Shown piece by piece: positions 345 through 56,560 of a stretch of DNA of 64,000 nt. Under the pieces are notes generated by a model. It was given only the letters and a program-made list of their open reading frames with translations, did not search any database and was not told where the DNA came from. The stretch spans positions 39,866,616 through 39,930,615 of the forward strand of contig NC_068982.1 of the NCBI RefSeq assembly GCF_001194135.2, given 5' to 3'. The stretch is from Octopus bimaculoides. Lineage: Eukaryota. A program made the position numbers and the translations under genes. Position 1 is the first letter of the stretch; every line of letters begins with the position of its first letter.

Positions 345-731
345 CTCTTTTACTCTTTTACTTGTTTCAGTCATTTGACTGCGGCCATGCTTGAGCACCG
401 CCTTTAGTCGAGCGGAAATCGACCCCAGGACTTATTCTATCGATCTCTTTTGCCGAACCGCTAAGTTACGGGGACGTAAACACACTAGCATTGGTTGTCA
501 AGCGATATTGGGGTGGAACAAACACATACACACAAGCATACATATATACATATATACATATATACGACGGGCTTCTTTCAGTTTCCGTCTACCAAATCCA
601 CTCACAAGGCTTTGGTCGACCCGAGGCTATAGTAGAAGACACTTGCCCAAGGTGCCACGCAGTGGGACTGAAACCAGAACCATGTGGTTGGTAAGCAAGC
701 TACTTACCACACATCCACTCCTGTGCCTATA
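345..731 (-). mobile_element. tRNA-derived SINE, family A, full length
   Basis: The minus strand has a tRNA-like head (A-box-like gtggatgtgtggtaag, B-box-like ggttctggtttcagtccc), a body with an internal (TA/CA)n tract, and a tail ending gcagtcaaatgactgaaacaagtaaaagagta. Homologous copies occur at 1666, 11944, 35990 and 46115. Confidence 0.9.
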
Positions 732-1055
732 GACCGTGATATAATGTATTTTATTGTAGACTAACTAAATGAAAACAATTTAATGCATATACAGAAAAAT
801 AAAGGTATTTCACCGGTGCACAATTGTGTTTCTGAAAACTGGATGTATTCATCCTGGAAAATATTCAAACTGGAGAATATGTAAGAATGTTGATTTTACT
901 AAGATATCCCCACGCGACTCAGTAGCACGGAGGTCACGAACTGTAAACGACATCATAGTAGTACTTCACCAGAATTTAATTTCTTTTCTTTTTATTTGCA
1001 AGTTGAATAAAAACTGCGAATGCACCAACAACTATTGTGTGTGTGTCTGTGTGTT

Positions 1056-2458: not shown

Positions 2459-2493
2459 ATTTTACGTTTCGAGCAAAGCGCTTCCTCAGAAAC
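2459..2493 (-). ncRNA. Degenerate minimal type I hammerhead motif (Penelope-type)
   Basis: Minus strand: gttt CUGAGGA a gcgc uuu gcuc GAA acgu A aaau. Core intact, palindromic ACGU stem III, GUA site, one mismatch in stem II, weak stem I. Confidence 0.4.
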
Positions 2494-10170: not shown

Positions 10171-11856
10171 CTATCTATCCGCCCGTCTTTCTGTCTGTCT
10201 GTCTGACTATCTGTATGTCTGTCTGTCTCTCTGTCAGTCTGACTGACTGATTGACTGACTGACTCTGTCTACTTGACCACATAACTTGCCAGCTACCTGT
10301 GCATCTATGAATATTTGAATGCATCAATACCTATATTTATGTATACATATATCTCCGCGCACGATTTGTTAACTACGGGCAGTTAGTTTATGCTGCGATG
10401 CTTGGCTATCAAAATATTTAACGGCTTCCAGCAGTTGTATTCGAACAATCGATGGTACATATGGCATGAAGCTTTCAGTGAGTTTCTAAGTAGTGAGACT
10501 ATATTTATAATAATGCAAATGTCCACCGTGATTTAATATCCATATGAATTATAAACATCCTTGCGGCCATACTTGATACAATTATACGTGCCTTCATCGA
10601 AATTCTTCTGACACTTTAATTACTTTGAAATGACAACTCGTAAATACTTCAATTGTTCTATCTCGAACAGTAGCTCTTCTGAAATCTTTAAAACCTTCTA
10701 AAATCTTTAATTTAATAGATGGTAATGTTTTGCAATGGAACTCGCATCTTATTGCCTTATAGATTGCTTGCAATATACATTGCTTGCAATATATATCAAG
10801 AATTTAAAATAGTTCAGTCGAAATTCTAGAAATTGGCAGCTAGGCACCGCTTCGTGTTAAAAAGGAAAGGATACATTAAATAACTTCCTACAAGAACTGA
10901 ATTTACTACTGAATAATTTTTATCCTATTTTTGTTCAAACTAAAGTAATATAACAGCTGGTATAAAAGCTCCCGCAAATCTAAAATCAAATACTATTTCA
11001 TCTGTTTTGTGTCAACATCTGCAGTAGTTAAGAGACGCGGTTTCAGGTGATTGAAATTCTGGGGATGACATAGTATAGCATAATGGTTAGCGTGAGGAAT
11101 GGGTGGGCGTAAGTGTCAAGAGTGCCGAGAGGTAGAGGAGCGAGAGGAACGGTGTTTGAAGGGTAAAGGTACGAGGCCATTATAATAGCGGAAGAAGTGA
11201 GAGAGAGAGAGAGAGAGAGAGGTGGGAGAGAGAGGGGGAGAGAGTTAGAGAGAGACCAAGAAAGGGTAATTCAGTTAGTGAGAAAGAGAGAAAGGAGACA
11301 GCCATCACGTTTGAGTGCCAGAGGTTTGATGCCAGAGACAGCCAGCATGTTTGTGTGCCAGTGAACGGCGTGTCAATCAGTTGAGTTGACCATCTCCGTA
11401 CATGATTCAGGATGTCATTGGGCGTAGACGAAACGCTAATCCCAGACATGCAGGAGTGTTCCTTGTAGGCCTTACTTTCTCTTGTAGATTATCAGTAGGT
11501 GCTTGGAGCTGAAATATCTGCTGAATATGAAGAAAAGTATTTTGGGATTTTGATTTTAAGTGTAACAAGAATGTGCATTCGTCAGAAGAGATTATAGTTA
11601 ATAGCGAGGTCCGGCATGTAATTTCGTCAGTAGAGATCCTTGGTGATAGTGAAATTTAGAAAGTGCAAATGCCTTAGTTGAGAGATAAGGTGCGGTGGTA
11701 TTTCCAATTTTTTCTTTTTGTTTTCTTTTTCTTTTTTTATTGCTGTTAAATGAGACAAGGTCTTCGTTAATGGAATCATTGTAGGCTTGTAGGTTTGTCT
11801 TGTGGTGACTCGGTTGCGTGTAGATGACATATACTTGCGGTATAGGAATGGGGAAT

Positions 11857-18362: not shown

Positions 18363-19249
18363 CTAAATAATAAACCAAATAATAACAGATAGATTGTGGT
18401 TCATTCACTACAGATGTTTCAGACATGTTCCTTTTAATGAATCGAATTATTTCATCATGTGGAAAAAACCGTTTTTATCAGGTGAATATTTGTACGAATT
18501 AAACATTTCAAAATATCTTAAATTCCAAAATATGTGATATTTAATGTAACTCTCGAAATATTCGGTCGGAGAAGTTGAGATGGTTTGAAATGTTTAATTC
18601 GTAAATACATTCACCTGGAGAAAACGGCTCTTTTCACATGTAATAATTCTATTCATCAATAGAAAACACGTCTGAAATATTTGTAGTGATTGAACAACAA
18701 TCACTCTCTTGTTATTTGATTTATATATATATATATATAGTCGGGGGGAGTAAGATGAAAAATAAGCGAAAATGCTCATTGGAAATCAAAAAAAGTAAAG
18801 ACTTTTTATGAAAAGTAACGGTAGATATATACAATTAGATGAACTGAGGTAGGAATAAAAGTAATAAAAGTCATTATTGTGAATTGTTAAAGAAATTCAA
18901 AAGCATACCTGTTTCGTAAAGTTATTAATCATTGCTTTGAATGCACACCGATTACTGATTGGTATCAGGTCTACTAGTGCTTGAATAAAACGATTATGTG
19001 TAAGTGAAGTAAGTAGTTCTGTATTATGTTATGTGTTCATATTTAGTTGTGGAAGATATTTATTGATGAAAGTTGCCTCTCCATTAATTCTTTATTGTAT
19101 TTAGGTGTTATGTGAACATTGATAGAAGGGGAAAATTAGGAAATTAGGATTAAGATTCCTAGCACAACTGTTTATGTGTCCACTGACCTGTATCTGTCTG
19201 TATTGTGGGTGGCGGATTTGTTCTTTGTGGAGAGCGGTTCTTCGACGGA

Positions 19250-20785
19250 GTGATTTCCTGTATGGCCAATATAATCATTACAGCCGAATAAAGAAAGTTT
19301 GGACCTCAGAACTCTCTGCATTCAATAAAACAGTAGCCCAAAATGTGTTTGCAGTGGACCACTGCTTTATTGAATGGGCTGCATCATTTGACACTTGACG
19401 AGATCCGAGTTATTGATGTGAAAACTCGAAAAATACTAACAAGCACACAAAATTTCCACATAACCTGACGTAGACCGCTTCTACCTAAAACGAAAACAAG
19501 GCGGCAGAGACTTAACATCGATCCAAAATGCCTTTGGATGTCGCACCATATCCCTTCGGCAACATCTTTTAACCACCAAGTGTCGAAGTGCATCCCTTGA
19601 CTAAATTTTCATTAATGAGACTGATAAAATCATAAGATTTGGAAAGCAGCTCTTTGAGCAACACTATTTATTTGATAACCTAGAATACATTCCCCAAAAG
19701 AAGCCGCACGACTCTACCGCAAAGTATCATCAGATGAAAGGATGAGCCTATATGAGCAGAAGACTATGCGTCGATATATTAGTAGAAAGTTCCGTGATGA
19801 TAGTAACATCGATCATGAAACAGTTTATCATGGACCAATAGCCGGATTACAACCCACCACTTTAAAGGGTATGCATTTGCAATCCAGGAACAGGAAATAT
19901 CAATCAATTACCTGATGCACAAAAGGGATAGAGATGCAGGAAAATCTGTACAATGTGACAACCGATGCAGACTTTGTGGAGTTCACACTGAAGATATCCC
20001 CCACATCATAAGCAGTTGTCCGAAAATGTCATCACGGTATTATCTACGGATGAGACATGATGTTGTAGCTAAGACACTCTATAATGAAATCCGTCGGAAG
20101 GATAATCCCGAGGACAAAGAAATAAGAACCCACAATACGCTAGAAACCATAACCACTAAAAATAAAAAGGAATGCTGGTGGAATGTACCAGTGGAGACCT
20201 CAATAAAATGTAAGCCTACAGACCTGATATAATGATTTGTGATGAAGAAGAGAAACTGTGCACGGTTATGGAAATTAGCTGCCCAGCAGATGTTAACATA
20301 AAGGACAAGATCAGTGAAAAAGAGAACATCTATGGTAAACCATTGAGAAATCTGCAGTTACTCTATCCAGATTATAAGGTTAAGGTTTATACCTGTGATG
20401 ATAGGGGCCCTGGGATATATAGCACACTGCCTAAATACCAATCTTGAGAAATTAGGCTTCTCAAAACCAGAAAGAAGAAAGCTAATTCGAAGACTGTAAA
20501 AATTTGTAAAACTTCCCAGAAGTTTATCATTTAAATACATATGAGCCTGTATAGAGATACAACTATATGCATGAGAATACATACATAAAACATACAAATC
20601 TGCTCATACATACATACATACATACATACGTACATACATACATACATACATATATACATACATACATGCATACATGCATACAAAAATTGTTGACGTTGAA
20701 ATTCCAATGAAAGAGATTTCTATCTAGGCTAGAAACAGGATCTTTCTCTATTGGCAAGAAATCTTGAAAAAAAACTTAATAATGA
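19250..20785 (+). pseudogene. R4/Dong-like non-LTR retrotransposon, 3' portion (thumb, CCHC finger, RLE endonuclease, 3' UTR)
   Basis: SRIKKVWTSELSAFNKTVAQN; DRFYLKRKQGGR; CRLCGVHTEDIPHIISSC (CCHC) followed by RHD; KPDLI...EISCP...K (PD-(D/E)xK-type). Frameshifted, with a tail ending near aaacttaataat. Confidence 0.9.
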
Positions 20786-21149
20786 CACAACATACATGCA
20801 TACAAACATAAATACATACATAATACGCACATACATATATATGTAGAATGTAATAGTTTCATGAAGAATAATTAAAAAATTATAAATGTTTATTTCATTT
20901 GTATCTAAATATTTCTTTCACTAATAAATTGGCTTTACCCCGATTTGCTATGGATTTGTGGAGGGTTAGAGTATAATGATACATACTTTGAGGTATTTTT
21001 TCATGCAATTCTGTAAATGATATAATATTCGAAATTTTTCTCATACCTATCTCTCAAGAGTTTCTCATACATGTACTACTGGATAAAATCAGAGCTTTCA
21101 TCAAGTCATGTCAGCACTTTCATTCTGAGTATTTTTTTTTTCAAATTGC

Positions 21150-24372: not shown

Positions 24373-25716
24373 GTTGAAAATGCACTGAATATAGTTAAAA
24401 TATTTCAATATATTTAAAGCTTTAACTGGTTTCACAGTTTACACTGATTTTCAAAAAGGAGACGTGGCTTATGTCGCAGCTGTCTTTTTTCTGACAAGCG
24501 TTTGAAGCTTTCCCTATTTTTGTAGGGAGTTCATGGCTCAAATTAGTATATGTTTTGAATAGCATTTGATTGGTAGAGGATATTCACATGAATTTTCTTA
24601 GAATTTTTGTAGGTTCCTCGCTACATCTGTGTGTTATTATCAAGTAACAATGTTTGGCGCCATGAGTTAAGGCTGACACGGTTGACTGAATATGTCCAAA
24701 CACTCAATGCTCTGAATATTTTCTGTGAAATGTTTGTAGATTATGAGCAAATGATTAAGTTTATAACCTATTGTACGTTTCTCGCCACGTCCGTGCGTTA
24801 GTGACACGTGACAGTATATTTTGCGCCTAAAAAGAAAACCGACGCGGGTGAGTGAACATGTCTAGTTATAATCAAGTCACTCTCAATCAAGATATATGTG
24901 CTCAAAATAATTCCCTCAGATTCCAGGTCTTCCCACTGTATCTACTTTCAGCGAATACCACAGATGAAGTACTGATGAACAAAGAAAATACTTTCATGCA
25001 AAAGTACAATCGAAGACTTAACAAACTTTAACAGAATACATACAGAAATAACAATTCATATGCAAAACTCATTCTGCCACATATCATGAGGAACCCACAC
25101 AGCTAACAACCTACACGTTAGCCAATGCACTACATACAAACGAGTCCAGTCCACTCTCCCACCAGACAGATTAAATTTGGAGTGCCTTGATTATAACTAA
25201 ACATGTTCACTCAACCACGTCGGCCTTCAAAAGAAGGGAAATGCACAAAGGGTTATACACTTAATCATGTGTTCATTCTCTACAAACACTTGACAGAAAA
25301 CATTTAGAATATTGAGTGTTTGGACAATGTTCAGTCAACCATGTCAGCCTTAACTTACGATGCCAAACATTTTCACTTGACACTAACACACAGACGTAGC
25401 GGAAAACCTACAAAGATTTCTACGACCAGTCATGTAATTATCCTCTACCAATCAGATCCCATTCAAAACATATACTAATTTGAGCCATGGAAACCATATA
25501 AAAACAGGGCAAATTTCAAACACTAGTCAGAAGCAAGAAAGCTGCGTCATAAGCCACGTCTTTCTATTTGAACGTTTTGAAAATCAGTGTAAACTATGAA
25601 ACAATTTAAAGCTTTAAATATATTAATTAAAAATATTTTAACTACACGCAGTGCATTGTCGACTTCTACTTTCCCTATATTTCTACCCGTGTCGAATAAA
25701 ATAACTTTGTTTCTCT
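24368..25716. mobile_element. Fold-back / long-TIR non-autonomous element (about 500-bp diverged arms)
   Basis: 24368-24885 is the reverse complement of about 25180-25670 (e.g. acgtggcttatgtcgcagc / gctgcgtcataagccacgt; agtgaacatgtctagttataatcaag / cttgattataactaaacatgttcact). No ORF. Confidence 0.8.
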
Positions 25717-29852: not shown

Positions 29853-31056
29853 AGAATGTACATATGTACACATACATAGTTAAAGAGAGAGTGAGATATA
29901 ATCCATTTTGTATTGCCATTCAACTAATAAAGAAACGTGATACCCTATTCCATGCTGGCAATGATTTCAATCAATGTGAACTAAAGGTATCAATGAAGGT
30001 GGAAACGTATGGGTTAATTCTAATAACAATCTCATATAACATTTTATACATCGATTCATTCACAAAATCTGTATAATTTTAATAGAATTTAAATCTCATT
30101 TTAACTATAGTCATTGTCGCCTTTCAAACTCACCGTTATCTTATTCCCGTATGAATATTTTAATGATTATTTATTCCGTACGGGACTTAAAAGTCTTTCA
30201 GATATCAATATAATTATTTGATGTCGCCATAAAATACAACAATAGAAGAGGAATTCATTGGTTGTATCGACTGTCGCTTTTTATTTTCAATAGAATTTTT
30301 GTCATATGGGTGACTAAAAGTATGGTGTTTGAATATGTGTTATTTTATTTGATCACACAAATTTTTAAATTTCGTTTTCACATTATATACAGCATTATAT
30401 CACTAATTAATACAAGCTAAAATCATTTTTTCGATTTTCCTATGTTTCTGTAATTAATATTGTCTTCTCTCAATGTTAATGGTATTTCATTATTTCTGTT
30501 CGTCACACTGTTTCCAATCATTTTTTTCTCTCTCCAAGATCCTCTGTTTATATAATTAAACAGTTTCTTTTCTTAAATGCCCTCTTAGTCTCTTAAGATT
30601 TCATCATATGACGTTAAACAACTGATAAATTTTATCTCTCTATTGTCAGTTTCTTCTGTTTTGCATCTTATTCCTTTGCTTTTGTTTTGGCTCCTGTCTG
30701 TATTTTTGCTACAACTGTCAATCTTCGGGGAATACCAGTCAGACAATCAGTAATTACGATGGCACATTTTATGTACTGCAATGTTAATTAAAGAAGAATA
30801 AACCTAGGTCTATTCTACATCTATTGTACATAGTAATATTGTTTCGCTTACTAACACATCACTTCCCAGTATTTAAAAATGTGGCAACATGTGACATATT
30901 TTATTCGTCAGTGAAATCAGTGTGTGGCGGAAATAGTTACATTAAATCGCAACAAAGGAGTTGACATCTACGTTGCGAAAAAAAATTTTTGTAACCAATT
31001 TGAACTGATACAATAAACAGTCGTGTTGTTGTTGTTGTTGTTGCTGCTGCTGCTGC

Positions 31057-35212: not shown

Positions 35213-35433
35213 TATTAAGACCGAAATTGTTCTCAACATGAAATATAGCAGCATACCAAAAACGTGAGCGGGCAAGACATTTAAAATCACCTAAAAAATC
35301 ATTATTAAACAGGGACTAGTTTCGGATTTAACAAATTCTTACCATTTGTCTATTCCTCATCAGCCTGATTTGTAATGTACCGCAATCATCAATGCTGCTA
35401 TATTTCATGTTGAGAACAATTTCGGTCTTAATA
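35213..35433. repeat. Perfect 42-bp inverted repeat enclosing a hammerhead
   Basis: tattaagaccgaaattgttctcaacatgaaatatagcagcat (35213-35254) is the exact reverse complement of 35392-35433. The left arm abuts an N gap. Confidence 0.9.
35300..35377 (-). ncRNA. Type I hammerhead ribozyme, canonical core, GUC site
   Basis: Minus strand: cagg CUGAUGA gga [acaaau/auuugu hairpin] ucc GAA acuagu C ccug. Palindromic ACUAGU stem III; stem I extends by cauua/uaaug. Confidence 0.8.
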
Positions 35434-35989: not shown

Positions 35990-36283
35990 TTTATTGTTCC
36001 ACTTGTTTCAGTCATTTGACTGCAACAATGCTGGAGCACCGACTTTAGTCGAGCAAATCGACCCCAGGACTTATTCTTGGTATGCCTAGCGCTTATTCTA
36101 TCAGTCATTTTTGCTGAACCGTCTACCAGGTCCCGTCTAGCAAATCCACGTAATAGGCTTAGGTCGGCCCGAAGCTATAGTAGAAGACGGTCTCCCGAGG
36201 TGCCACGTAGTGGGACTGAACCCAGATCCATGTGGTTAGGAAGCGAGTTACTTACCACACACCCACTCCTGCACTGCACCTAT
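35990..36283 (-). mobile_element. SINE family A with internal deletion
   Basis: Head and tail match 345-731, but the central microsatellite-bearing segment is missing. Confidence 0.85.
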
Positions 36284-36517
36284 AAATNNNNNNNNNNNNN
36301 NNNNNNNNNNNNNNNNNNNNNNNNNNNNNNNNNNNNNNNNNNNNNNNNNNNNNNNNNNNNNNNNNNNNNNNNNNNNNNNNNNNNNNNNNNNNNNNNNNNN
36401 NNNNNNNNNNNNNNNNNNNNNNNNNNNNNNNNNNNNNNNNNNNNNNNNNNNNNNNNNNNNNNNNNNNNNNNNNNNNNNNNNGCAACTCTTAAAGCCAACC
36501 CCTTAAAAACAGATTGA

Positions 36518-36578
36518 ATTATAGATCATGATTTCGTAGTTATTCTAGTATTATACAACCTCTACTCGTCAGTATAAT
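36518..36578 (-). ncRNA. Type I hammerhead ribozyme (tandem copy 1)
   Basis: Minus strand: auuaua CUGACGA guag [22-nt loop] cuac GAA aucaugau C uauaau. 6-bp stem I, 4-bp stem II, palindromic AUCAUGAU stem III. Predicted cleavage between 36524 and 36523. Confidence 0.85.
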
Positions 36579-36988
36579 ATGGTCAAGAAAAATAGCAGTA
36601 AACAGAGAATCAACATACCAAACTAACACCGTGTATCCATTATAGTATATAGAAGACTGTTCATCGCTATTTCCCTATGTAGGTGGCGGGAATTTCGAAT
36701 TGCATCTCGGTAAATGTGCTTTTTTCTCAGAATAAATTCAGCACTGAATATATTCTGGTAATATATTTAAATTCAATAATAGGACGAATTCTTTTACAAG
36801 AATTTATCAAGTAGCTAGCGTGAAAAAAACCTCATAAGGGAAAAAATTCCATCACTTATTCACGAAATATATATTTATATTTATATAAGGGCATGAGGGA
36901 CTCTAAGGTCAGACTACCATAAAAACCACATTTTTACCGAACGCGAGGAAATGCAACTCTCAAAGTCAACCCCTTAAAAACAGACTGA

Positions 36989-37049
36989 ATTATAGATCAT
37001 GATTTCGTAGTTATTCTAGTATTATACAACCTCTACTCGTCAGTATAAT
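36989..37049 (-). ncRNA. Type I hammerhead ribozyme (tandem copy 2)
   Basis: Identical to 36518-36578 and exactly 471 bp away. Predicted cleavage between 36995 and 36994. Confidence 0.85.
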
Positions 37050-37493
37050 ATGGTCAAGAAAAATAGCAGTAAACAGAGAATCAACATACCAAACNNNNNN
37101 NNNNNNNNNNNNNNNNNNNNNNNNNNNNNNNNNNNNNNNNNNNNNNNNNNNNNNNNNNNNNNNNNNNNNNNNNNNNNNNNNNNNNNNNNNNNNNNNNNNN
37201 NNNNNNNNNNNNNNNNNNNNNNNNNNNNNNNNNNNNNNNNNNNNNNNNNNNNNNNNNNNNNNNNNNNNNNNNNNNNNNNNNNNNNNNNNNNNNNNNNNNN
37301 NNNNNNNNNNNNNNNNNNNNNNNNNNNNNNNNNNNNNNNNNNNNNNNNNNNNNNNNNNNNNNNNNNNNNNNNNNNNNNNNNNNNNNNNNNNNNNNNNNNN
37401 NNNNNNNNNNNNNNNNNNNNNNNNNNNNNNNNNNNNNNNNNNNNNNNNNNNNNNNNNNNNNNNNNNNNNNNNNNNNNNNNNNNNNNNNNNNNN

Positions 37494-38442: not shown

Positions 38443-39020
38443 TAATTTTTGAATAATGAGGCTTCTTTACTCAGTCTTACTTGTTGTGAGGTCTAGAAAG
38501 CAAGTTGATAAAATGAGAAAATTACAAATTGTGGTTGTAATCGTTCAATGTGTTGACTGAAGAGCAGCAAACAACCTAAGACATTAAAGAAGATCCTCAC
38601 TAGTGCCAAATTATTCTCTAGAACAACGGACGCAAGAATCGAAAAGTGTAGTCGCCCTAATTGCGGAACATATCCCAATCTTTTGGAAGGATCGGAATTC
38701 CATTTCAGACAAGGGCAAAAATTCAAAATCAAATCTAACTTCACTTGCGCCTCTTAAGAACTTATTCACGTAATCAGATGCTCGGGATGCCATAGAAACT
38801 ATATTTAATTCGACAGGAATGCCGATCAGACTGAGATGTACGGTCTACAGACTTACAATATCCTCCCTAAAATATCGCAAAATATATTTCAGTCAATACA
38901 TTCATGAATGTGCAGAACGATTACAACTACAAGTCATGATTTTCCCTTTTATCAACTTGCTTTCTGTTCCTCGCAAGTAAGACTGAATAAAGAGTCTCAT
39001 TTATTCAAAAATATAAACCA
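38443..39020. repeat. Inverted duplication (about 120-bp arms) around the PLE remnant
   Basis: atttttgaataatgaggcttctttactcagtcttacttg...gaaagcaagttgataaaa...gtaatcgttc at 38443-38546 is the reverse complement of about 38912-39012. Confidence 0.8.
38569..38870 (+). pseudogene. Penelope-like linker plus GIY-YIG endonuclease remnant
   Basis: KQPKTLKKILTSAK...KCSRPNCGTYPNL...FKIKSNFTCAS*ELIHVIRCSGCHRNYI*..TGMPIRLR shows the PLE Cys linker followed by a degenerate LIY...C..C...YIGQTG. Confidence 0.8.
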
Positions 39021-39487
39021 GAATTAAATATGAGCCCGTGTTAACAATAAAAAACTTACTTATTGTAAGATATAAGCCAAAATACAGTATGGACCAAGAA
39101 TAAAAATTGCAGATTTATCTCACCTTTGCTGTAAAATACATGAATGAACAATTATCTCCCCTGTCAATATATCCATTTCTTAGCTTGATGAACGATACAA
39201 AACCGGTTCGTACTTTAATTATGGTGAAAGAACAAATTCATAATTTGTACAAAATTGTATATCTTTATTATTATGACTCTAATATACTCCTTAATCCGGT
39301 AAAACAAATCTTCTGTGTTTTTTCATCTTTTCGCTTTCTGTATATATCCAACGACGTGTATTCCCCCACTAAAATATCTTCTACCTAATATATATATATA
39401 TATATATGACGTCAGTAAAATATAAATCCGAAATAGAAGCACACTATAAGTTGTAGAGTAGTATATTATCAAGGTAAAGTTAGATAA

Positions 39488-39572
39488 GGCCGGTTTATAG
39501 GATTACTCTGTGTTTCATGTCCATAAAGCGCTTAGTTTTACAGCTTATCATCAGATCCCAAACCTGCTGGCC
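39488..39572 (-). ncRNA. Type I hammerhead ribozyme, extended bulged stem I (left copy)
   Basis: Minus strand: ggcc..gguuug ggau CUGAUGA u aag cuguaaaac uaagc gcuuuaugg a cau GAA ac acaga gu A aucc ua uaaacc ggcc. GUA site. Confidence 0.65.
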
Positions 39573-39990
39573 TGCGGCCTCTCTAGAAAATTGAGGAGGA
39601 AAATACTTCGTTAGACTATGTCAACGACAGGGGATTGTCTGACTCTGGCTGTCAATCGTAAATGACCCTGTTATCGTATGGGTCTCAGTAGGCCAGCAAG
39701 AATCTAGGCCCCTACAAAGACAGGACGAGGCGTTGTAAACTGTGCATAGTTGAACGGGCGAGGATATTAAAGGACACTCTCGACCCGGGAAACATCCTTA
39801 ACTGCAGAAATGAGGTCTTTGGACCATGCTTGCACTTCAGGAAATTCCTTCTGGTCTACTGCGACCCACATAATAACAGAGCCACTTACGGTCGACAGCC
39901 AAAGAGAGTTAATCCCTGCTGTTGACATAGAATAACGAAGTCTTATCACCCTCTATTTTCTAGAGAGGCCACTTGTTAGAGAGGCCATTA

Positions 39991-40075
39991 GGCCAACAGG
40001 TTTAGGATCTGATGATATGCTGTAAAGCTAAGCGCTTTATGGAAGTGAAATCTAGGGTAATCCCATAAACCAGCC
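39991..40075 (+). ncRNA. Type I hammerhead ribozyme, extended bulged stem I (right copy)
   Basis: gguuua ggau CUGAUGA u aug cuguaaagc uaagc gcuuuaugg a agu GAA auc uag ggu A aucc ca uaaacc. GUA site; predicted cleavage after 40059. Confidence 0.65.
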
Positions 40076-40094
40076 TTTTCTAACTTTACCTTTA

Positions 40095-42945
40095 CCTATA
40101 CTACAATTGCGCTATTTAGGTCTGTGTATGTGTGTGTCAAAATTTTGCTACCAAATTCCTCCGCAACCACTGGTCCGATTTCGACCAAACTTGGCGTTAC
40201 GAATCGTGCGTACCAGGAGAGTGTCAACATCTAAATGGGATTCACGAAAATTAACCGATCCGGTTCCAGTCTGATAAAATCCGACAAAACGAATTACTCC
40301 TTTCTCACTATTCAATTACTCTTCTACTATTCCTCATGCTTACTACCTCTTTCTCTTATTGAGAGTTGTAGTTTGCGGAGTGGTAATTGACAGAATTGCA
40401 GAGAATGTTACCTCTCATAATTCACTCTCTCTTAGCCGGTTGCGCTCTTTTCCATGTCTCCTTCGGTGTTACTTGGATGTTTCTCTCTCACATATATACA
40501 TATATATATATTACGTATTGAACTCAGTCTCATACAATGTTACCTCTCTTAACACACACACACACACACACTCTCTCTCTCTCTCTCCCTCTCTCTCTCT
40601 CTCTCTATCTCTCATATTTACTACCTCTTTTACTTCATTCTCTCTGAACCGGTTGCGTTCTTTCCAATGTTTCTATCGATGTCATTTAGAAAAAAAAATA
40701 CTGTTAGTCTTCGGTGAAAATTACAATTACACCATACTCGTTAAACTCTATCTTAAAGAGTGGTTTTTTGATTTTATTGAATTGCTCTAAACGAATTTGA
40801 CCATAAAAATATTGGAAATTTATTATTTTTTTAATATATTAATAAAATTTGTCGGATCTATTTTCATGCTCTCGACCGTCGGAGCTATTCTTATGTCTGT
40901 TTACGTTGTTACGTGTATGAATATGTTATTGCATGTACTGTCGTTTGATATTTCACTCATACGTAGAATTCTGAAATAGCAAACGTAAAAAGTATAAAAA
41001 TTTCGGAAACTTTACGCATTCGACTGCACGAAAATGGGTTCGACTAATTTTATTATTACCTTAAAAAATACTAATTTAAAATAGTGTTTGTCGAGAGTCG
41101 TGTAATTGTAAATAAATACCTAGGGTAAATATTTACAATTAATACCGTGAAAACTTCCCGTTCAGAGAAATTAGCTTAAATTCTAGCTGAATCGTCACAA
41201 AACGTTCACTATATAATTGTTATAAGTATTCATGCTTTCAACACTACACTATGCCCAGAAAAGGAAAGACCAACAACCTGTTCCGAAAAAATCCCGTTCA
41301 CAAAAAGCTGCTGAGCAAAGACAACAGACGCTAATTGAATAAAACAGACAAGGAGCTAGCTCTACTCTGTGTCTCGAAATAAAACGAAGGCAAATGTAAG
41401 AAACCGGTGCAATGGAGACACAAGAAGAAACAGAGGCACGGAGAAATGCAGATCGACTGAAGAGACAGGAAACCCGTGCTATGGAAAGACCAGAAAAATG
41501 AAAAGCCTGAAGGAATATGAATCGGCTGAGAACACAGAAAAGCCGTGCAATGGAAGCACCACAAGAATCAGAAGCACGGACAAATACTGATCGGCTGGGG
41601 AAACAGGATTCTAGGGAAAACACGTCACTGCTACAAATTCAGCAGCGACAAGTAAACAACCAGAACCGATACCTTTCAAGACTTCATCAGCAAAGAACGG
41701 ACACTGATAGAATGGCTATGGAAGTTGATATGGCAGATTTTCATGAGAAAAAAATGAAACGCAAGGCTTATGTTGCACTACTGTGGAAAGATTTTTAACA
41801 GAACATACCCTGACTGCAAAGCTTACCTTTGGGGTACTGAGAAAACTACCCTCTGATGTGACAAAGCCTCCAGAATTTATTGCTAAGTACTATGATGTTA
41901 ATCTATGCGGTCAAACGTTTCTAAAGAAAATTCGTGACTACAATAATTTACTGGATTATGGCTTCACTTGCACTGGATAATCCACCAGTTGGACCACAAG
42001 GTAATAGCACTTTTGTGCCTACTTTCAAGATTCAAGTTATACCACCGCATAGGAAGTTTCGTACCACCAGTAAATAAGAAGCCAGTCTACGCACAGCTAT
42101 ATTTCGTTGACACTGAAAAAGGGATCTGAAACAGGTTGTCATTCAGAGGAGCTGACAATGACCTTAATGAGAGCATCCTGCTAGACTTGCAGAGAGCACT
42201 GCATATGCATAATCAATATGTCAAAAATTTCAAACAGGCTATTGATATGATTAAGGAATACCCTGCACCAGGAAAATGTTCCACCGGTGATATTATTATA
42301 AGTAATGACAAACAGCTTATTCCTGCTGGATCACATGAGAGAACCTCTAATCCACCAACTGCACCAGGAGTTACTGTGATCATGATGGGAGATGCTACCA
42401 ATAATACAAACATTAAAGCTGCGGATGTTGTTGTGCAGTACATAGAAAGCAATAGAAAATAAGACTACATTAGCCAAATCCACAGAAGCTATGGCACTTT
42501 TCATTATGTACTTCTGTTTCCCTATGGAGAAGCTGGCTGGAATGTGTTCTTGAAAGACAATGACCGATGCAAAGATATCACTGAATGTGACTTTTGTTCT
42601 TATCGGCTTCAGGTAAGAAAAGACAAGTTCAATGACATAATGAAAAGTACACGTCTGATGCAACAATATGCAAAGACAGAGCAAAATCGATTACACTTCC
42701 TGAGAACTCATCAGAAACAACTGAAGGCTGAAAAGTTCCAGGGCCTTCTGAATGCTATTGCAAATGGTGACATGAATGAAGTAGGGTCTAAAATCATTCT
42801 TACGCCATCACACACTGGTTCTCCTCGGTTTTACAAGGAGTGTTTCCAAGCTGAAATGGCTCTAGTGAGATAGTCTGGAAAGCCAGATTACTTCATCACT
42901 AGGACAACCAGCCCAAAGAGGACTGAGATAACGGAAGCCTGATTT
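40095..42945 (+). mobile_element. Helitron, 5' region and Rep-domain pseudogene, 3' truncated
   Basis: HRIGSF, YAQLYF, HER..NPP, YVLLFPYGEAGW, YRLQVR, EQNRLHFLRTHQKQLKAE, IILTPSHTGSPRFY and GKPDYFIT are Helitron Rep motifs, with stops and frameshifts. Repeated R/E-rich N-terminus from ATG 41250. A 5' non-coding ctatactac...tgtgt...ccgatttcgaccaaacttggc segment resembles Helitron left ends (5' boundary less certain). Confidence 0.9.
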
Positions 42946-44626: not shown

Positions 44627-44672
44627 GACACCTGATGAAGGCTGGAGGATATATCAGCCGAAACGTTGTGTT
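44627..44672 (+). ncRNA. Minimal type I hammerhead ribozyme (Penelope-type) in a short repeat at about 44575-44770
   Basis: gacac CUGAUGA a ggcug gaggauauau cagcc GAA acgu U guguu. 5-bp stems I and II, extra A after A9, palindromic ACGU stem III, GUU site. Confidence 0.7.
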
Positions 44673-55289: not shown

Positions 55290-55655
55290 TTCTTTTCTAA
55301 GTACAAGGCCCGAAATTTTGTGGGCGGGGACCCAGTCGATTAGAGCAACTCCAGTACGCAACTGGTACTTAATTTATCCACCCTGAAAGGTAAAGTCGAC
55401 CTCAGCGGAATTTGAACTGGCGTGCTAATGTTTCTCATTTCTTTATTTCCCACATGGGGCTAAACAATGACAGACAAACGGATTAAGTCGATTACATCGA
55501 CCCCAGTGCATAGCTGGTACTTTATTTATCGACCCTGAAAGGATGAAAGGTAAAGTCGACCTCGGCGGAATTTGAACTCAGAACGTAACGGTAGACGAAA
55601 TACCGCTAAGCATTTCACCGGGCGTGCTAACGTTTCTGCCAGCTCGCCGCCTTAA
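55290..55655 (-). mobile_element. SINE family B, full copy (55432-55655) plus an internally deleted copy (55290-55435)
   Basis: Minus head aaggcggcgagctggcagaaacgttagcacgcc and B-box-like gagttcaaattccgcc. The second copy repeats ctgaaaggtaaagtcgacctc. Confidence 0.85.
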
Positions 55656-56560
55656 TGTAGTACAAAAGAATATTATTGAAATGATTCTTTGTTTGCGTTG
55701 TTTTGATAGTAAATGTACTTTATTACTCGAAAAAATATTATTTTTACTGTAGGAATGTGTTGCAATTATTATTGTTTTCTCCTAAATTAGAATCTGGTCT
55801 TTTTATGCGCGTATTTCTTGATTTGTAACATTCACAATCGGTTTTGAATTCTTAATCTTGTTCTTTCTTAAATACGAATAGTATATGATTGGGAAATAGT
55901 GGATGTGTGAATGCTTAGAGTTTACCTCTATAGGCATGCAGCAACTGCTTCTGAGAAAATTATACAAGCTGCATCTAATTTATGATACAGCGAGAAATTT
56001 TTGGTCATGTGAATTAATCGGATATTTTTGATTTATATGAAAACTGTAGTTCTTTGGGCGGCAGTATTTCTACATTTCAAAGTAATGACTAGAACAAGCT
56101 TTCATTTACCAGAATGTTATATAATATCCCATAGTCATTAGATTCAGTCAAGTCTATACGGAGACACTTTCAGATTTCGTACTAATCGCATCAATCTAAT
56201 ATATTTGATCCATTTGTCCAGAATAGGAGACACTAGCCCATTAACCTCTTTGAATAAAAAGGAGTGATATCAATTTTGATGCAATTGTGATTACAAGCAG
56301 CGTTTTGTAAGTAAGAAGTAGATATCCACAAGTAGTGTCTTAATGCAATTTCTCCCTTTCCTTACACGAATTATTTACAAACACTTTTCGATCTGTCCAT
56401 TACGTTTCAGCACTGACTGCAAATATCTATGCCTACATACTTCTGTATGTGTGCGATAATATGTGTGTATCGGACATGCATGCATACACACACACACACA
56501 TATATACAAACTCACATATATTTATATATACGTACCTATACGTGTGTCTATCTATATGTG

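What the first reader, a model, noticed from the sequence alone, without database searches (positions are those of the whole stretch)
39471..40097. Head-to-head pair of extended hammerheads ending in (ACCTTT)n-like tails
Seen: two diverged copies of a 235-bp or longer element point away from each other. Both keep CUGAUGA, GAAA, a GUA site, a 9-bp stem II hairpin and a long stem I with a 2-nt bulge (ggau/aucc, then gguuu(a/g)/uaaacc) despite many substitutions. Both end in ctaactttacct..., a short tandem tail. This fold has a closed stem III and differs from the minimal palindromic HHRs elsewhere in the window. Established: (ACCTTT)n tails occur in RTE/Bov-B-mobilised elements such as Sauria SINE. 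Inference: an HHR-bearing short retroposon, possibly RTE-mobilised; a transcript crossing both copies could also form a long dsRNA.
Basis: partly seen in the sequence, partly recalled or inferred. Interest (0 to 1): 0.75.

Follow-up and report, generated by a model that had tools for sequence, protein, structure and literature searches.

The report
Inverted repeat pair with hammerhead-like motifs
Two diverged, back-to-back copies of a roughly 250-bp repeat each carry an atypical hammerhead-ribozyme-like motif near their outer end. They sit in a genome full of Penelope-type retroelements, so this is most likely one more ribozyme-bearing retroelement fragment of a known kind, not a new class.

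Summary
The sequence observation holds. 39458-40104 is an inverted pair: left arm 39458-39705 (-), right arm 39847-40104 (+), about 77-80% identical, around a non-palindromic 140-bp spacer. Each arm has CUGAUGA...GAAA...GUA framed by a 4+6-bp helix I with a 2-nt bulge.

The motif exceeds chance: 0 of 1500 simulated windows had a hit combining the right arm's helix I extension and 9-bp hairpin. But it is not a canonical "extended" hammerhead:
- Helix II does not start with G10.1-C11.1.
- The 9-bp hairpin sits behind an internal loop and is broken in the left arm.
- Helix III has only 2-3 bp.
- No Rfam model matches.
- The two copies show no compensatory change.
- The "(ACCTTT)n tail" is only 1.7-2.5 units, and the arms run 7-13 nt past it.

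Context favours Penelope-like elements (PLEs) over RTE. The window holds three PLE endonuclease remnants, four other loci with minimal, mostly palindromic hammerhead motifs, and one 471-bp tandem repeat. The PLE copy 430 bp upstream has the same layout, a short inverted truncated copy abutting a longer one.

Best reading, at moderate confidence: an old PLE-type double-strand-primed insertion of a ribozyme-bearing non-autonomous or 3'-terminal fragment, with the ribozyme weak or dead. A new member of a known kind.

The parts
39458..39705 (-). Left arm: copy of the repeat on the minus strand, with its motif-bearing end at 39458
   Evidence: Global alignment to the right arm, identity rising from about 68% (inner) to 90% (around the motif); inverted repeats I1 and I2; BLAST self hit.
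39706..39846 (.). Spacer of 140 bp between the arms. It is not self-complementary and may be the 5' extension of one of the two copies.
   Evidence: Local alignment score 8 against 7.9 +/- 1.5 in 1000 shuffles. No Pfam hit in its translations. No PLE protein similarity.
39847..40104 (+). Right arm: copy of the repeat on the plus strand. It carries 17 extra bases (13 + 4) around 39971-39989, reading as a local duplication of TAGAGAGGCCA.
39999..40071 (+). Right hammerhead-like motif. Helix I 5' strand 39999-40008; CUGAUGA 40009-40015; helix II region 40016-40046 (9-bp hairpin 40020-40042); GAAA 40047-40050; helix III 40050-40058; GUA 40057-40059 with predicted cut 40059/40060; helix I 3' strand 40060-40071 (bulge 40064-40065).
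   Evidence: Helices I and II are predicted at p = 0.39-0.99 and 0.95-1.0; helix III at about 0.
39492..39564 (-). Left hammerhead-like motif, with predicted cut 39504/39503. Same core. Helix II has an A.C mismatch and helix III is reduced to 2 bp.
40080..40097 (+). Right 'tail' CTAACTTTACCTTTACCT (about 2.5 ACCTTT-like units), followed by shared TATACTAC (40097-40104)
   Evidence: Not called by TRF.
39471..39483 (-). Left 'tail' CTAACTTTACCTT (about 1.7 units), followed outward by GATAA and the shared TATACTAC (39465-39458)
38445..39409 (+). Neighbouring Penelope-like element copy (context, not part of the pair). Short inverted 5'-truncated piece 38445-38546 (-); longer copy from 38547 with the endonuclease ORF remnant 38557-39027 (+) and a 3' region ending at (TA)n 39388-39409.

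Best explanation
The locus is an old insertion of a hammerhead-bearing retroelement fragment. The fragment is either a short non-autonomous (retrozyme-like) element or the 3'-terminal, pseudo-LTR part of an autonomous element. It was made by Penelope-like element (PLE) machinery.

**Proposed mechanism (inferred from published PLE biochemistry)**
- The PLE enzyme cuts both strands of an AT-rich target.
- It primes reverse transcription from both 3' ends, starting a few tens of nucleotides downstream of the hammerhead.
- Two cDNA copies therefore grow toward each other. They end up head-to-head, with 3' ends and ribozyme motifs outward and variable 5' truncation in the middle. Here that gives a 248-bp arm facing a roughly 400-bp copy made of the spacer plus the right arm.

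**The ribozyme (inferred)**
- It is an atypical type I hammerhead. The full catalytic core is present, helix I is long and bulged, one extra nucleotide follows A9, and A10.1-U11.1 replaces G-C. Helix II is long and interrupted, and helix III is very short.
- Like other metazoan PLE and retrozyme hammerheads, it would at best cleave weakly, as a dimer or with protein help.
- The left copy has since lost pairs in helices II and III and is probably dead.

**Shown:** the anatomy, the non-random motif and the PLE-rich context.
**Inferred:** mobilisation by PLE, single-event origin, and activity.
For: **Anatomy**
- Two arms with a non-palindromic spacer, and motif ends outward.

**Non-random motif, in a genome enriched for hammerheads**
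- 0 of 1500 simulated windows had a hit with both the helix I extension and the 9-bp hairpin.
- The window has 7 relaxed-descriptor hits at 5 loci, against 0.42-0.44 expected.

**Substitution pattern**
- Differences between the arms avoid the core and helices: 2 of 51 positions against 8 of 22 (p = 0.0007 per nucleotide, 0.023 per event).
- Identity rises toward the motif end (inner versus outer blocks p = 0.026).

**PLE context**
- The peptide at 38557-38904 hits 388 proteins, the best at 6.9e-24. The long hits carry RVT_1 plus a C-terminal GIY-YIG domain.
- Endonuclease remnants lie at three loci. These copies appear to end at (TA)n, by eye plus one marginal alignment (13 of 300 shuffles scored as high).
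- The adjacent PLE copy has the same layout of a short inverted truncated copy next to a longer copy.
- Minimal PLE-type hammerhead-like motifs and a 471-bp tandem hammerhead repeat lie in the window.

**Literature**
- Inverted 5'-truncated copies and tails are typical of PLE insertions, and (TA)n is a favoured target of one PLE clade, Naiad (PMC8557442).
- A purified PLE protein cuts and extends both strands and starts reverse transcription internally, downstream of the hammerhead, at AT-rich sites (PMC11167929).
- A U.U at the base of helix II occurs in about 60,000 axolotl retrozyme hammerheads (PMC7229834).
Against: - No second locus of the family was found in the window, in metagenomes, in viral contigs or through protein-space searches. 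Mobility, 5'-truncation spectrum and conservation are therefore untested.
- No sequence similarity links the arms to the 3' regions of the window's PLE copies or to a related PLE contig. No PLE coding remnant lies in the spacer.
- The PLE copies here carry a different hammerhead, minimal and palindromic.
- G10.1-C11.1, which is highly conserved in PLE hammerheads, is absent.
- Helix III is not a true palindrome.
- No Rfam hammerhead model matches, even in an 87-nt search space. A convincing minimal hammerhead in the window is missed too.
- There is no compensatory change.
- Arms that are only about 77-80% identical, with uneven divergence, could equally be two independent insertions or an in-situ duplication.
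Confidence: 0.45

Rival explanations
1. An ordinary DNA-level inverted-repeat element (a MITE or foldback with long terminal inverted repeats), or a hairpin-RNA locus. The arm happens to contain, or once captured, a hammerhead-derived segment. The unit moves or persists as one 647-bp piece and the ribozyme motif plays no part.
For: The whole region folds as one hairpin (-337 kcal/mol, z = -21.6). The arms share sequence beyond the supposed tail (TATACTAC). Other inverted structures lie nearby, at 40788-41104 and 38445-39012. The joined flanks would read as a palindrome (read from the sequence).
Against: No target-site duplication or known terminal motif was recognised. The 140-bp centre is non-palindromic and the arms diverge unevenly. 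One nearby inverted structure is demonstrably a PLE insertion, not a MITE. The motif is too complete to be accidental.
Confidence: 0.2
2. A single solo copy of a hammerhead-bearing repeat was duplicated in place, in inverted orientation, by a replication or repair template switch. The pair then reflects no insertion mechanism at all.
For: Only one locus is known. A spacer between arms is typical of such duplications (inference). The arms end symmetrically, as any inverted duplication would.
Against: Divergence is not uniform along the arms, about 72% in the inner blocks against about 85% in the outer (p = 0.026). A neutral in-place duplicate would not be expected to show this. The identical architecture at the adjacent PLE copy argues for an insertion-linked process.
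Confidence: 0.15
3. One reading: a SINE-like short retroposon with a monomerically active extended hammerhead, mobilised by an RTE-clade LINE through an (ACCTTT)n-type 3' tail. Two independent insertions happen to face away from each other.
For: Sauria SINEs mobilised by Bov-B/RTE do end in (ACCTTT)1-4 (PMC13295347). Both arms contain CTAACTTTACCTT near the outer end. The 3' part is the best conserved.
Against: The tail has only 1.7-2.5 units, is not terminal and is not detected as a tandem repeat. No LINE 3' end with this sequence lies in the window. The one LINE C-terminus seen (19915-20232) has (CATA)n and (ACAT)n arrays 370-610 bp downstream of its ORF stop, and I did not map its 3' end. 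No tRNA-like head was found. Two independent insertions landing head-to-head 140 bp apart is unlikely. Hammerheads in animals are tied to PLEs and retrozymes.
Confidence: 0.07
4. The hammerhead resemblance is fortuitous: a conserved hairpin plus short common words (CUGAUGA, GAAA, GUA) in a repeat of unrelated nature.
For: No Rfam hammerhead hit. Non-canonical helix II base and marginal helix III. Folding z-scores of only -1.39 and -0.44. No covariation. At about 86% identity, the core would be kept in both arms by chance about one time in five (own estimate, 0.87^11).
Against: The joint motif was never reached in 1500 simulated windows. The genome is strongly enriched in true hammerhead motifs. 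Substitutions avoid the core and helices.
Confidence: 0.08

Closest known systems
Hammerhead ribozymes of Penelope-like elements (minimal and variant type I motifs in pseudo-LTRs; Cervera & de la Pena 2014, PMC4209133)
   Same: Type I topology, full catalytic core, an extra nucleotide after A9, a long or interrupted helix II (as in the Drosophila virilis variant) and a very short helix III. Sits close to the 3' boundary of an inserted copy. Occurs in a genome with PLE remnants and an inverted-copy architecture.
   Different: A10.1-U11.1 instead of the highly conserved G10.1-C11.1. Helix III is not a clean palindrome. Helix I is much longer (10 bp with a bulge). No similarity to the PLE copies seen in this window, and no PLE ORF is attached.
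Non-LTR retrozymes of animals (170-400-bp tandem repeats with type I hammerheads expressed as circular RNAs; PMC7229834; bioRxiv 10.64898/2026.07.22.740005)
   Same: Unit size range (an arm of at least 248 bp, or about 400 bp with the spacer), non-coding, AT-rich, and a type I hammerhead with a 2-3-bp helix III. A weak helix II base has precedent (U.U in axolotl HHR_Amex2). Such elements are thought to depend on PLEs.
   Different: Not tandem. There is one motif per arm and the arms are inverted, so no unit-length RNA can be excised from a single-strand transcript. No sign of circular permutation.
Sm-alpha / Sj-alpha SINE-like hammerhead elements of schistosomes (from memory; schistosome hammerheads are mentioned in PMC4209133 and PMC7229834)
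   Same: A short dispersed non-coding repeat carrying a type I hammerhead with an extended, bulged helix I.
   Different: The schistosome motif is canonical (4-bp helix II, G-C base, loop-bulge tertiary contact) and catalytically proven. None of that is shown here.
Sauria SINE / Bov-B (RTE) partnership
   Same: A hexamer ACCTTT-like repeat near the 3' end.
   Different: Sauria SINEs have a tRNA-like head, a LINE-derived 3' region, a terminal (ACCTTT)n and no ribozyme. Here the repeat has under 3 units, is followed by shared sequence, and no RTE partner is seen.

Membership tests
Hammerhead ribozyme, type I | Conserved core C3-U4-G5-A6-N7-G8-A9, G12-A13-A14, A15.1-U16.1, and H17 not G | tested here: met
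   All positions are present and identical in both arms. H17 = A.
Hammerhead ribozyme, type I | Open-ended helix I formed by the sequences flanking the core | tested here: met
   10 pairs (4 + 6 with a 2-nt bulge), 100% of cells paired, one A-U to G-U change. Pairing probability is 0.39-0.99 across the ten pairs in the right arm.
Hammerhead ribozyme, type I | Helix II stacking directly on the core, with a 10.1-11.1 pair that is normally G-C | tested here: not met
   U.U, A.G, U-A, G.A on the right and U.U, A.A, A.C, G.A on the left precede the 9-bp hairpin. Allowing one extra nucleotide after A9, 10.1-11.1 becomes A-U in both arms, followed by mismatches.
Hammerhead ribozyme, type I | Helix III closing A15.1-U16.1 | tested here: inconclusive
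   3 bp with a 3-nt loop on the right, 2 bp on the left, predicted probability about 0. Equally short helices III are normal in animal type I hammerheads that act as dimers (PMC4209133, PMC7229834).
Hammerhead ribozyme, type I | Match to curated covariance models (Rfam hammerhead families) | tested here: not met
   No hit at the gathering score, at E<=1 (whole window), at E<=10 (1 kb) or at E<=10 (87 nt). As a control, a convincing minimal hammerhead at 36524-36572 is also missed, so this test is weak.
Hammerhead ribozyme, type I | Covariation in the helices across family members | tested here: inconclusive
   Only two sequences. 0 pairs changed on both sides, 2 one-sided compatible changes, 2 broken pairs.
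Hammerhead ribozyme, type I | Site-specific self-cleavage | not testable with these tools
No bench assay.
PLE minimal hammerhead (Cervera & de la Pena 2014) | Extra nucleotide between 9 and 10.1; G10.1-C11.1; palindromic 15.2-16.2 and loop 3; located in the pseudo-LTR of a PLE | tested here: not met
   The extra nucleotide is compatible (U). G10.1-C11.1 is absent. AUCUAGGGU pairs with itself only through G.U wobbles and a central A.A, and ACACAGAGU pairs poorly. No attached PLE ORF.
Non-LTR retrozyme | Head-to-tail tandem units, each with a type I hammerhead | tested here: not met
   The arms are inverted, not tandem. There is no direct repeat or circular permutation.
SINE mobilised by an RTE-clade LINE | Pol III (tRNA/5S/7SL-like) head; terminal microsatellite-like tail shared with a LINE; target-site duplication | tested here: not met
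   ARAGORN finds nothing. The tail has 1.7-2.5 units and is not terminal. No LINE with this 3' end lies in the window. No duplication was recognised.
PLE-type insertion architecture | An inverted 5'-truncated copy abutting the 5' end of a longer copy, at an AT-rich or (TA)n site, in a genome with PLEs | tested here: met
   A 248-bp arm faces a roughly 400-bp copy. The flanks are AT-rich, with a (TA)n 48 nt away. PLE remnants lie at three loci, and the adjacent one has the same layout. The architecture is compatible with PLE insertion but not exclusive to it.
MITE / foldback transposon | Terminal inverted repeats plus target-site duplication, recurring as one unit | tested here: inconclusive
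   Long inverted arms are present. No duplication was recognised. Recurrence is not testable because no other copy was reachable.

The most novel reading that the evidence does not exclude
The arms are copies of a so far undescribed SINE-like retroposon that carries a monomerically active hammerhead of unusual build: A-U at 10.1-11.1, a 13-layer interrupted helix II and a 10-bp bulged helix I. It would be mobilised by a non-PLE (RTE-clade) LINE through its ACCTTT-type 3' end. That would be the first link between hammerheads and RTE retroposition.
Probability: 0.05. Interest if true: 0.7.

Novelty: new member of a known kind. Interest (0 to 1): 0.3.

Why it matters
If the family proves real, it adds a structurally unusual type I hammerhead to the catalogue of ribozyme-bearing animal retroelements. 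Its oddities are the non-G-C helix II base, the long interrupted helix II and the long bulged helix I.

It would also give a compact natural example of the head-to-head product expected from double-strand priming by Penelope-like enzymes. That is useful for testing the recently proposed mechanism.

As it stands, this is one decayed locus in a genome already rich in such elements. Its main practical value is as a seed for a genome-wide family search, and as a reminder that curated covariance models miss the hammerhead-like motifs seen in this window.

Tried and rejected
**Searches for more copies**
- BLAST of 39400-40200 and of both flanks against the window found only microsatellite hits and the self inverted hit.
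- A covariance model built from the two motifs found only themselves plus a 15-bit chance-level hit at 30545-30620, which lacks C3.
- A metagenome scan with a structure-aware pattern gave 3 hits, all inside ordinary-looking sequence with no similarity to the element, about the number I expected by chance.
- A viral-contig scan gave 0 hits.
- Protein-space searches with antisense ORFs of the arms, and exact look-ups of three arm ORFs, found nothing.
- A search with the Helitron ORF found nothing.
- A search with the LINE ORF returned one unrelated ENA contig.
- Contigs carrying related PLE proteins (L005-L008) do not contain the element.

There is no read, RNA-end or polymorphism evidence.

**Ideas tested and dropped**
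- Coding remnant in the spacer (a zinc-knuckle-like CxxC): no Pfam hit and no significant similarity.
- C/D-box snoRNA: the best Rfam near-miss is snoZ122 at 15-23 bits against a gathering score of 38. There is no D box.
- Circular permutation or tandem origin of the arms: not supported.
- Extension of arm homology far into the flanks: not significant beyond TATACTAC.
- Similarity of the arms to the 3' regions of the window's PLE copies or of L005: none.
- A possible decayed hammerhead in the neighbouring PLE copy (39184-39212, sharing AAACCGGTT with L005) rests on a 9-mer that chance could give, so I do not rely on it.
- The source organism could not be identified.


Full report
**What is in the sequence**

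The region is a diverged inverted repeat. The repeat finder gives arms 39471-39573/39990-40092 (103 nt, 87% complementary) and 39576-39632/39914-39970 (57 nt, 84%). A sensitive self-BLAST aligns 39458-40104 to its own reverse complement (674 columns, 69.6%).

A global alignment of the two halves shows that real homology covers 39458-39705 (minus strand) and 39847-40104 (plus strand). Identity rises from about 68% at the inner ends to 90% around the motif. The 140-bp centre (39706-39846) is no more self-complementary than shuffled sequence (score 8 against 7.9 +/- 1.5). The right arm carries 17 extra bases, a local duplication of TAGAGAGGCCA.

After CTAACTTTACCTT both continue, with a small indel, through the same TATACTAC. 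Beyond that, the similarity is not significant. Tandem Repeats Finder reports no tandem array at either tail. The right tail has about 2.5 ACCTTT-like units and the left about 1.7.

**The hammerhead-like motif**

CTGATGA-N31-GAAA-N7-GTA occurs exactly once per arm, at 40009-40059 (+) and 39554-39504 (-). All core positions of a hammerhead (C3-A9, G12-A14, A15.1, U16.1, H17 = A) are present and identical in the two arms.

- **Helix I.** The flanks form 4 bp, a 2-nt bulge, then 6 bp. All 20 cells are paired, with one A-U to G-U change.
- **Helix II.** The 9-bp hairpin exists intact in the right arm. In the left arm one G-C has become A.C. The hairpin does not abut the core. Four nucleotides on each side separate them (UAUG/AAGU on the right, UAAG/ACAU on the left), so the 10.1-11.1 position reads U.U. 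If one allows the extra nucleotide after A9 that is usual in PLE hammerheads (PMC4209133), 10.1-11.1 becomes A-U in both arms. That pair is followed by U.G and G.A on the right, or A.A and G-C on the left, then a small asymmetric loop and the hairpin.
- **Helix III.** It is A-U, U.G, C-G with a 3-nt loop on the right, and A-U, C-G on the left.

ViennaRNA gives high pairing probabilities for helices I and II in the right arm (0.39-0.99 and 0.95-1.0). It gives about 0.5 for helix II in the left arm and about 0 for helix III in both. Folding z-scores of the 79-nt segments are unremarkable (-1.39 and -0.44).

No Rfam hammerhead model matches at any threshold, even when only 87 nt are searched. That test is weak, because a convincing minimal hammerhead elsewhere in the window is missed too. 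The best near-miss, a C/D-box snoRNA model, stays far below its threshold, and no D box is present.

**Is it more than chance?**

Yes for the motif; not proven for function. I ran a relaxed descriptor: core, GAAA, UH, and at least 4 bp of adjacent helix I.

- The descriptor finds 7 hits at 5 independent loci in the window. First-order Markov simulations give 0.42-0.44 per window.
- Among 665 simulated hits in 1500 windows, 28 had a helix I extension of at least 6 bp across a bulge, and 4 had a hairpin of at least 9 bp in the helix II region. None had both, as the right arm does.
- The 10 differences between the two 73-nt motifs fall 2 in core plus helices (51 nt) and 8 in loops and bulges (22 nt). 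Fisher p = 0.0007 per nucleotide, or 0.023 if adjacent changes count as one event.

The structure was picked on these same two sequences, so that test is partly circular. There are no compensatory double changes. With two sequences, nothing more can be said about covariation.

**No further copies**

- The window holds no other copy by BLAST or by a covariance model built from the two motifs. The only extra hit scores 15 bits and lacks C3.
- A structure-aware pattern scan of the metagenome collection returned three hits, all in sequence unrelated to the element and about the number expected by chance. A viral scan returned none.
- Searches of protein space with ORFs of the arms returned nothing.
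- The source organism remains unidentified. It is an AT-rich (33% G+C), extremely microsatellite-rich eukaryote assembly with many gaps.

**Context: a Penelope-rich neighbourhood**

A read-through translation of 38557-38904 (+) hits 388 proteins in the representative library, the best at 6.9e-24. Most of the 700-820-residue hits scanned carry RVT_1 followed by a C-terminal GIY-YIG domain. That is the architecture of canonical endonuclease-positive PLEs, and the window matches their linker and endonuclease.

tblastn maps endonuclease remnants to three loci: 38557-39029 (+), with the ORF stop at 39025-39027; 19020-19274 (-); and 24852-25043 (+). There are no RT parts, so all three copies are strongly 5'-truncated. 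Nothing maps inside 39400-40110.

The copy at 38547-39029 is preceded by a 102-bp inverted piece (38445-38546) that is the reverse complement of 38915-39012 (the inverted endonuclease hit at 38463-38570 is). This is a short inverted 5'-truncated copy abutting a longer copy.

Two of the window's copies and a related ENA contig (L005, 57% protein identity) appear to end about 300-360 nt (window) and about 490 nt (L005) past the endonuclease region, in a T-rich then C-rich stretch followed by (TA)n. This rests on reading the sequences and one marginal alignment, in which 13 of 300 shuffles scored as high. L005 carries a minimal hammerhead-like motif with a palindromic helix III (GCUAA-CUGACGA...GAAACCGGUU-UUAGC) about 290 nt downstream of the endonuclease domain.

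The window also has the following:
- A tandem direct repeat of period 471 bp, each unit with a minimal hammerhead whose helix III is the palindrome AUCAUGAU (36524-36572 and 36995-37043, minus strand).
- A hammerhead at 35314-35363 (-) with GGA/UCC at the base of a long interrupted helix II and ACUAGU as helix III. It sits between perfect 42-nt inverted repeats.
- A PLE-style motif at 44632-44667 (+) with the extra A after A9, G10.1-C11.1 and ACGU.
- A weaker motif at 2463-2489 (-).

**Reading against published PLE biology**

- PLE insertions are typically 5'-truncated and often carry an inverted 5'-truncated copy at the 5' end. They may have a 30-40-bp tail, and Naiad-clade PLEs favour (TA)n targets (PMC8557442).
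- A purified PLE protein cleaves and extends both DNA strands at AT-rich sites. It initiates reverse transcription internally, some 85-90 nt downstream of the hammerhead cut site (PMC11167929).
- PLE hammerheads are minimal. They usually have an extra base after A9 and G10.1-C11.1, and a tiny palindromic helix III. They are poorly active alone, and variants exist with long or bulged helix II (PMC4209133).
- Animal retrozymes are 170-400-bp non-coding units with type I hammerheads. One abundant axolotl family has a U.U at the base of helix II (PMC7229834). A 2026 preprint argues that retrozymes are non-autonomous PLE derivatives and also occur as monomers.

**Most likely explanation (confidence about 0.45)**

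The pair is the product of PLE-type retrotransposition of a hammerhead-bearing RNA, either a non-autonomous retrozyme-like element or the 3'-terminal part of an autonomous element. In this model both strands of an AT-rich target primed cDNA synthesis a few tens of nucleotides downstream of the ribozyme. That gives two copies with 3' ends outward and truncated 5' ends meeting in the middle: a 248-bp arm against a roughly 400-bp copy that includes the spacer.

The ribozyme is an atypical type I hammerhead that would be weak at best. The left copy has lost pairs in helices II and III.

Shown: the anatomy, the non-random motif, the PLE context and the identical architecture next door. Inferred: PLE mobilisation, a single-event origin, and any catalytic activity.

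Points against:
- The arms show no similarity to the window's own PLE 3' regions.
- G10.1-C11.1 is absent.
- Helix III is not palindromic.
- Divergence along the arms is uneven.
- There is no second locus at all.

**Rivals**

- **MITE, foldback or hairpin-RNA locus (0.2).** The whole unit folds at -337 kcal/mol (z = -21.6) and the arms share sequence past the tail. But no target duplication or terminal signature was found, and the centre is non-palindromic.
- **In-place inverted duplication of one solo copy (0.15).** Possible, but it is disfavoured by the uneven divergence (p = 0.026) and by the recurrence of the architecture at the adjacent PLE.
The literature confirms that Sauria SINEs end in (ACCTTT)n. 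Here, though, the repeat is too short and not terminal, there is no tRNA-like head, and no matching LINE 3' end lies in the window.
- **Fortuitous motif (0.08).** Argued against by the simulation and by the genomic enrichment.

**Verdict**

A ribozyme-like retroelement is plausible; the RTE link and the "extended, closed-stem-III" description are not supported.

This is best filed as a new, atypical member of the known association between type I hammerheads and Penelope-type retroelements, pending a family-level test. Interest is modest (0.3).

The decisive work is a genome-wide family collection with covariation analysis, identification of the autonomous partner by its 3' end, RNA-end mapping at 40059/40060 and 39504/39503, and cleavage assays of monomer and dimer constructs.

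Noticed in passing
window 36524-36572 and 36995-37043 (minus strand); repeat unit about 36500-37094: A direct repeat of period 471 bp (at least 2 units, cut by assembly gaps). Each unit carries a minimal type I hammerhead: AUAUUAUA-CUGACGA-GUAG...CUAC-GAAA-UCAUGAU-C-UAUAAU, with a palindromic helix III (AUCAUGAU). It looks like a retrozyme or a tandem PLE pseudo-LTR. Rfam does not detect it.
   Followed up: partly
window 35213-35433 (hammerhead 35314-35363, minus strand): A hammerhead (CAGG-CUGAUGA-GGA...UCC-GAAA-CUAG-UC-CCUG, with a long interrupted helix II) lies in a 137-nt spacer between perfect 42-nt inverted repeats (35213-35254 / 35392-35433). The left arm abuts an assembly gap, so the repeat may be longer. 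This looks like a young inverted structure.
   Followed up: partly
window 44632-44667 (+): A PLE-style minimal hammerhead: CUGAUGA, an extra A, GGCUG...CAGCC (G10.1-C11.1), GAAACGUU with the ACGU palindrome, and a 5-bp helix I. It lies next to an (ATA)n array.
   Followed up: partly
window 2463-2489 (minus strand): A further hammerhead-like motif, GUUU-CUGAGGA-AGCGCUUUGCUC-GAAACGUA-AAAU, close to an assembly gap.
   Followed up: no
window 38445-39409; also 19020-19274 (-) and 24852-25043 (+): Three strongly 5'-truncated PLE copies, each keeping only the endonuclease end of the ORF. The first has a short inverted truncated partner (38445-38546). At least two copies appear to end about 300-360 nt after the ORF stop at a (TA)n tract, suggesting (TA)n-targeted insertion.
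   Followed up: yes
L005 1237-1290 (ENA metagenome scaffold carrying a PLE ORF 57% identical to the window's remnant): A minimal hammerhead-like motif with a palindromic helix III, GCUAA-CUGACGA-AAACAUUUUG-GAAACCGGUU-UUAGC, about 290 nt downstream of the GIY-YIG domain. The contig ends in (TA)n like the window's copies.
   Followed up: partly
window 42136-42873 (+): A Helitron remnant. The ORF at 42544-42873 matches Helitron_like_N (Pfam E = 4.4e-14).
   Followed up: partly
window 19915-20232 (+): The C-terminal zinc-knuckle end of a LINE reverse transcriptase ORF (weak zf-RVT hit). (CATA)n and (ACAT)n arrays follow at 20605-20841. It lies next to a PLE remnant on the opposite strand.
   Followed up: no
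window about 36100-36290 (-), 391-732 (+), 11600-11800 (-); and 55470-55660 (-), 55340-55450 (-): Two apparent tRNA-derived SINE families, judged by eye from B-box-like GGTTCAGTCCC and GAGTTCAAATTCCGCC. Several copies yield similar spurious ORFs. ARAGORN calls no tRNA.
   Followed up: no
window 40788-41104: Another diverged palindrome (317 bp, about 63% self-complementary), 700 bp to the right of the finding. Its nature is unknown.
   Followed up: no
window 30545-30620 (minus strand): A weak match (15 bits, E about 0.07) to the covariance model built from the two motifs. It has AUGAUGA instead of CUGAUGA and is probably chance.
   Followed up: partly
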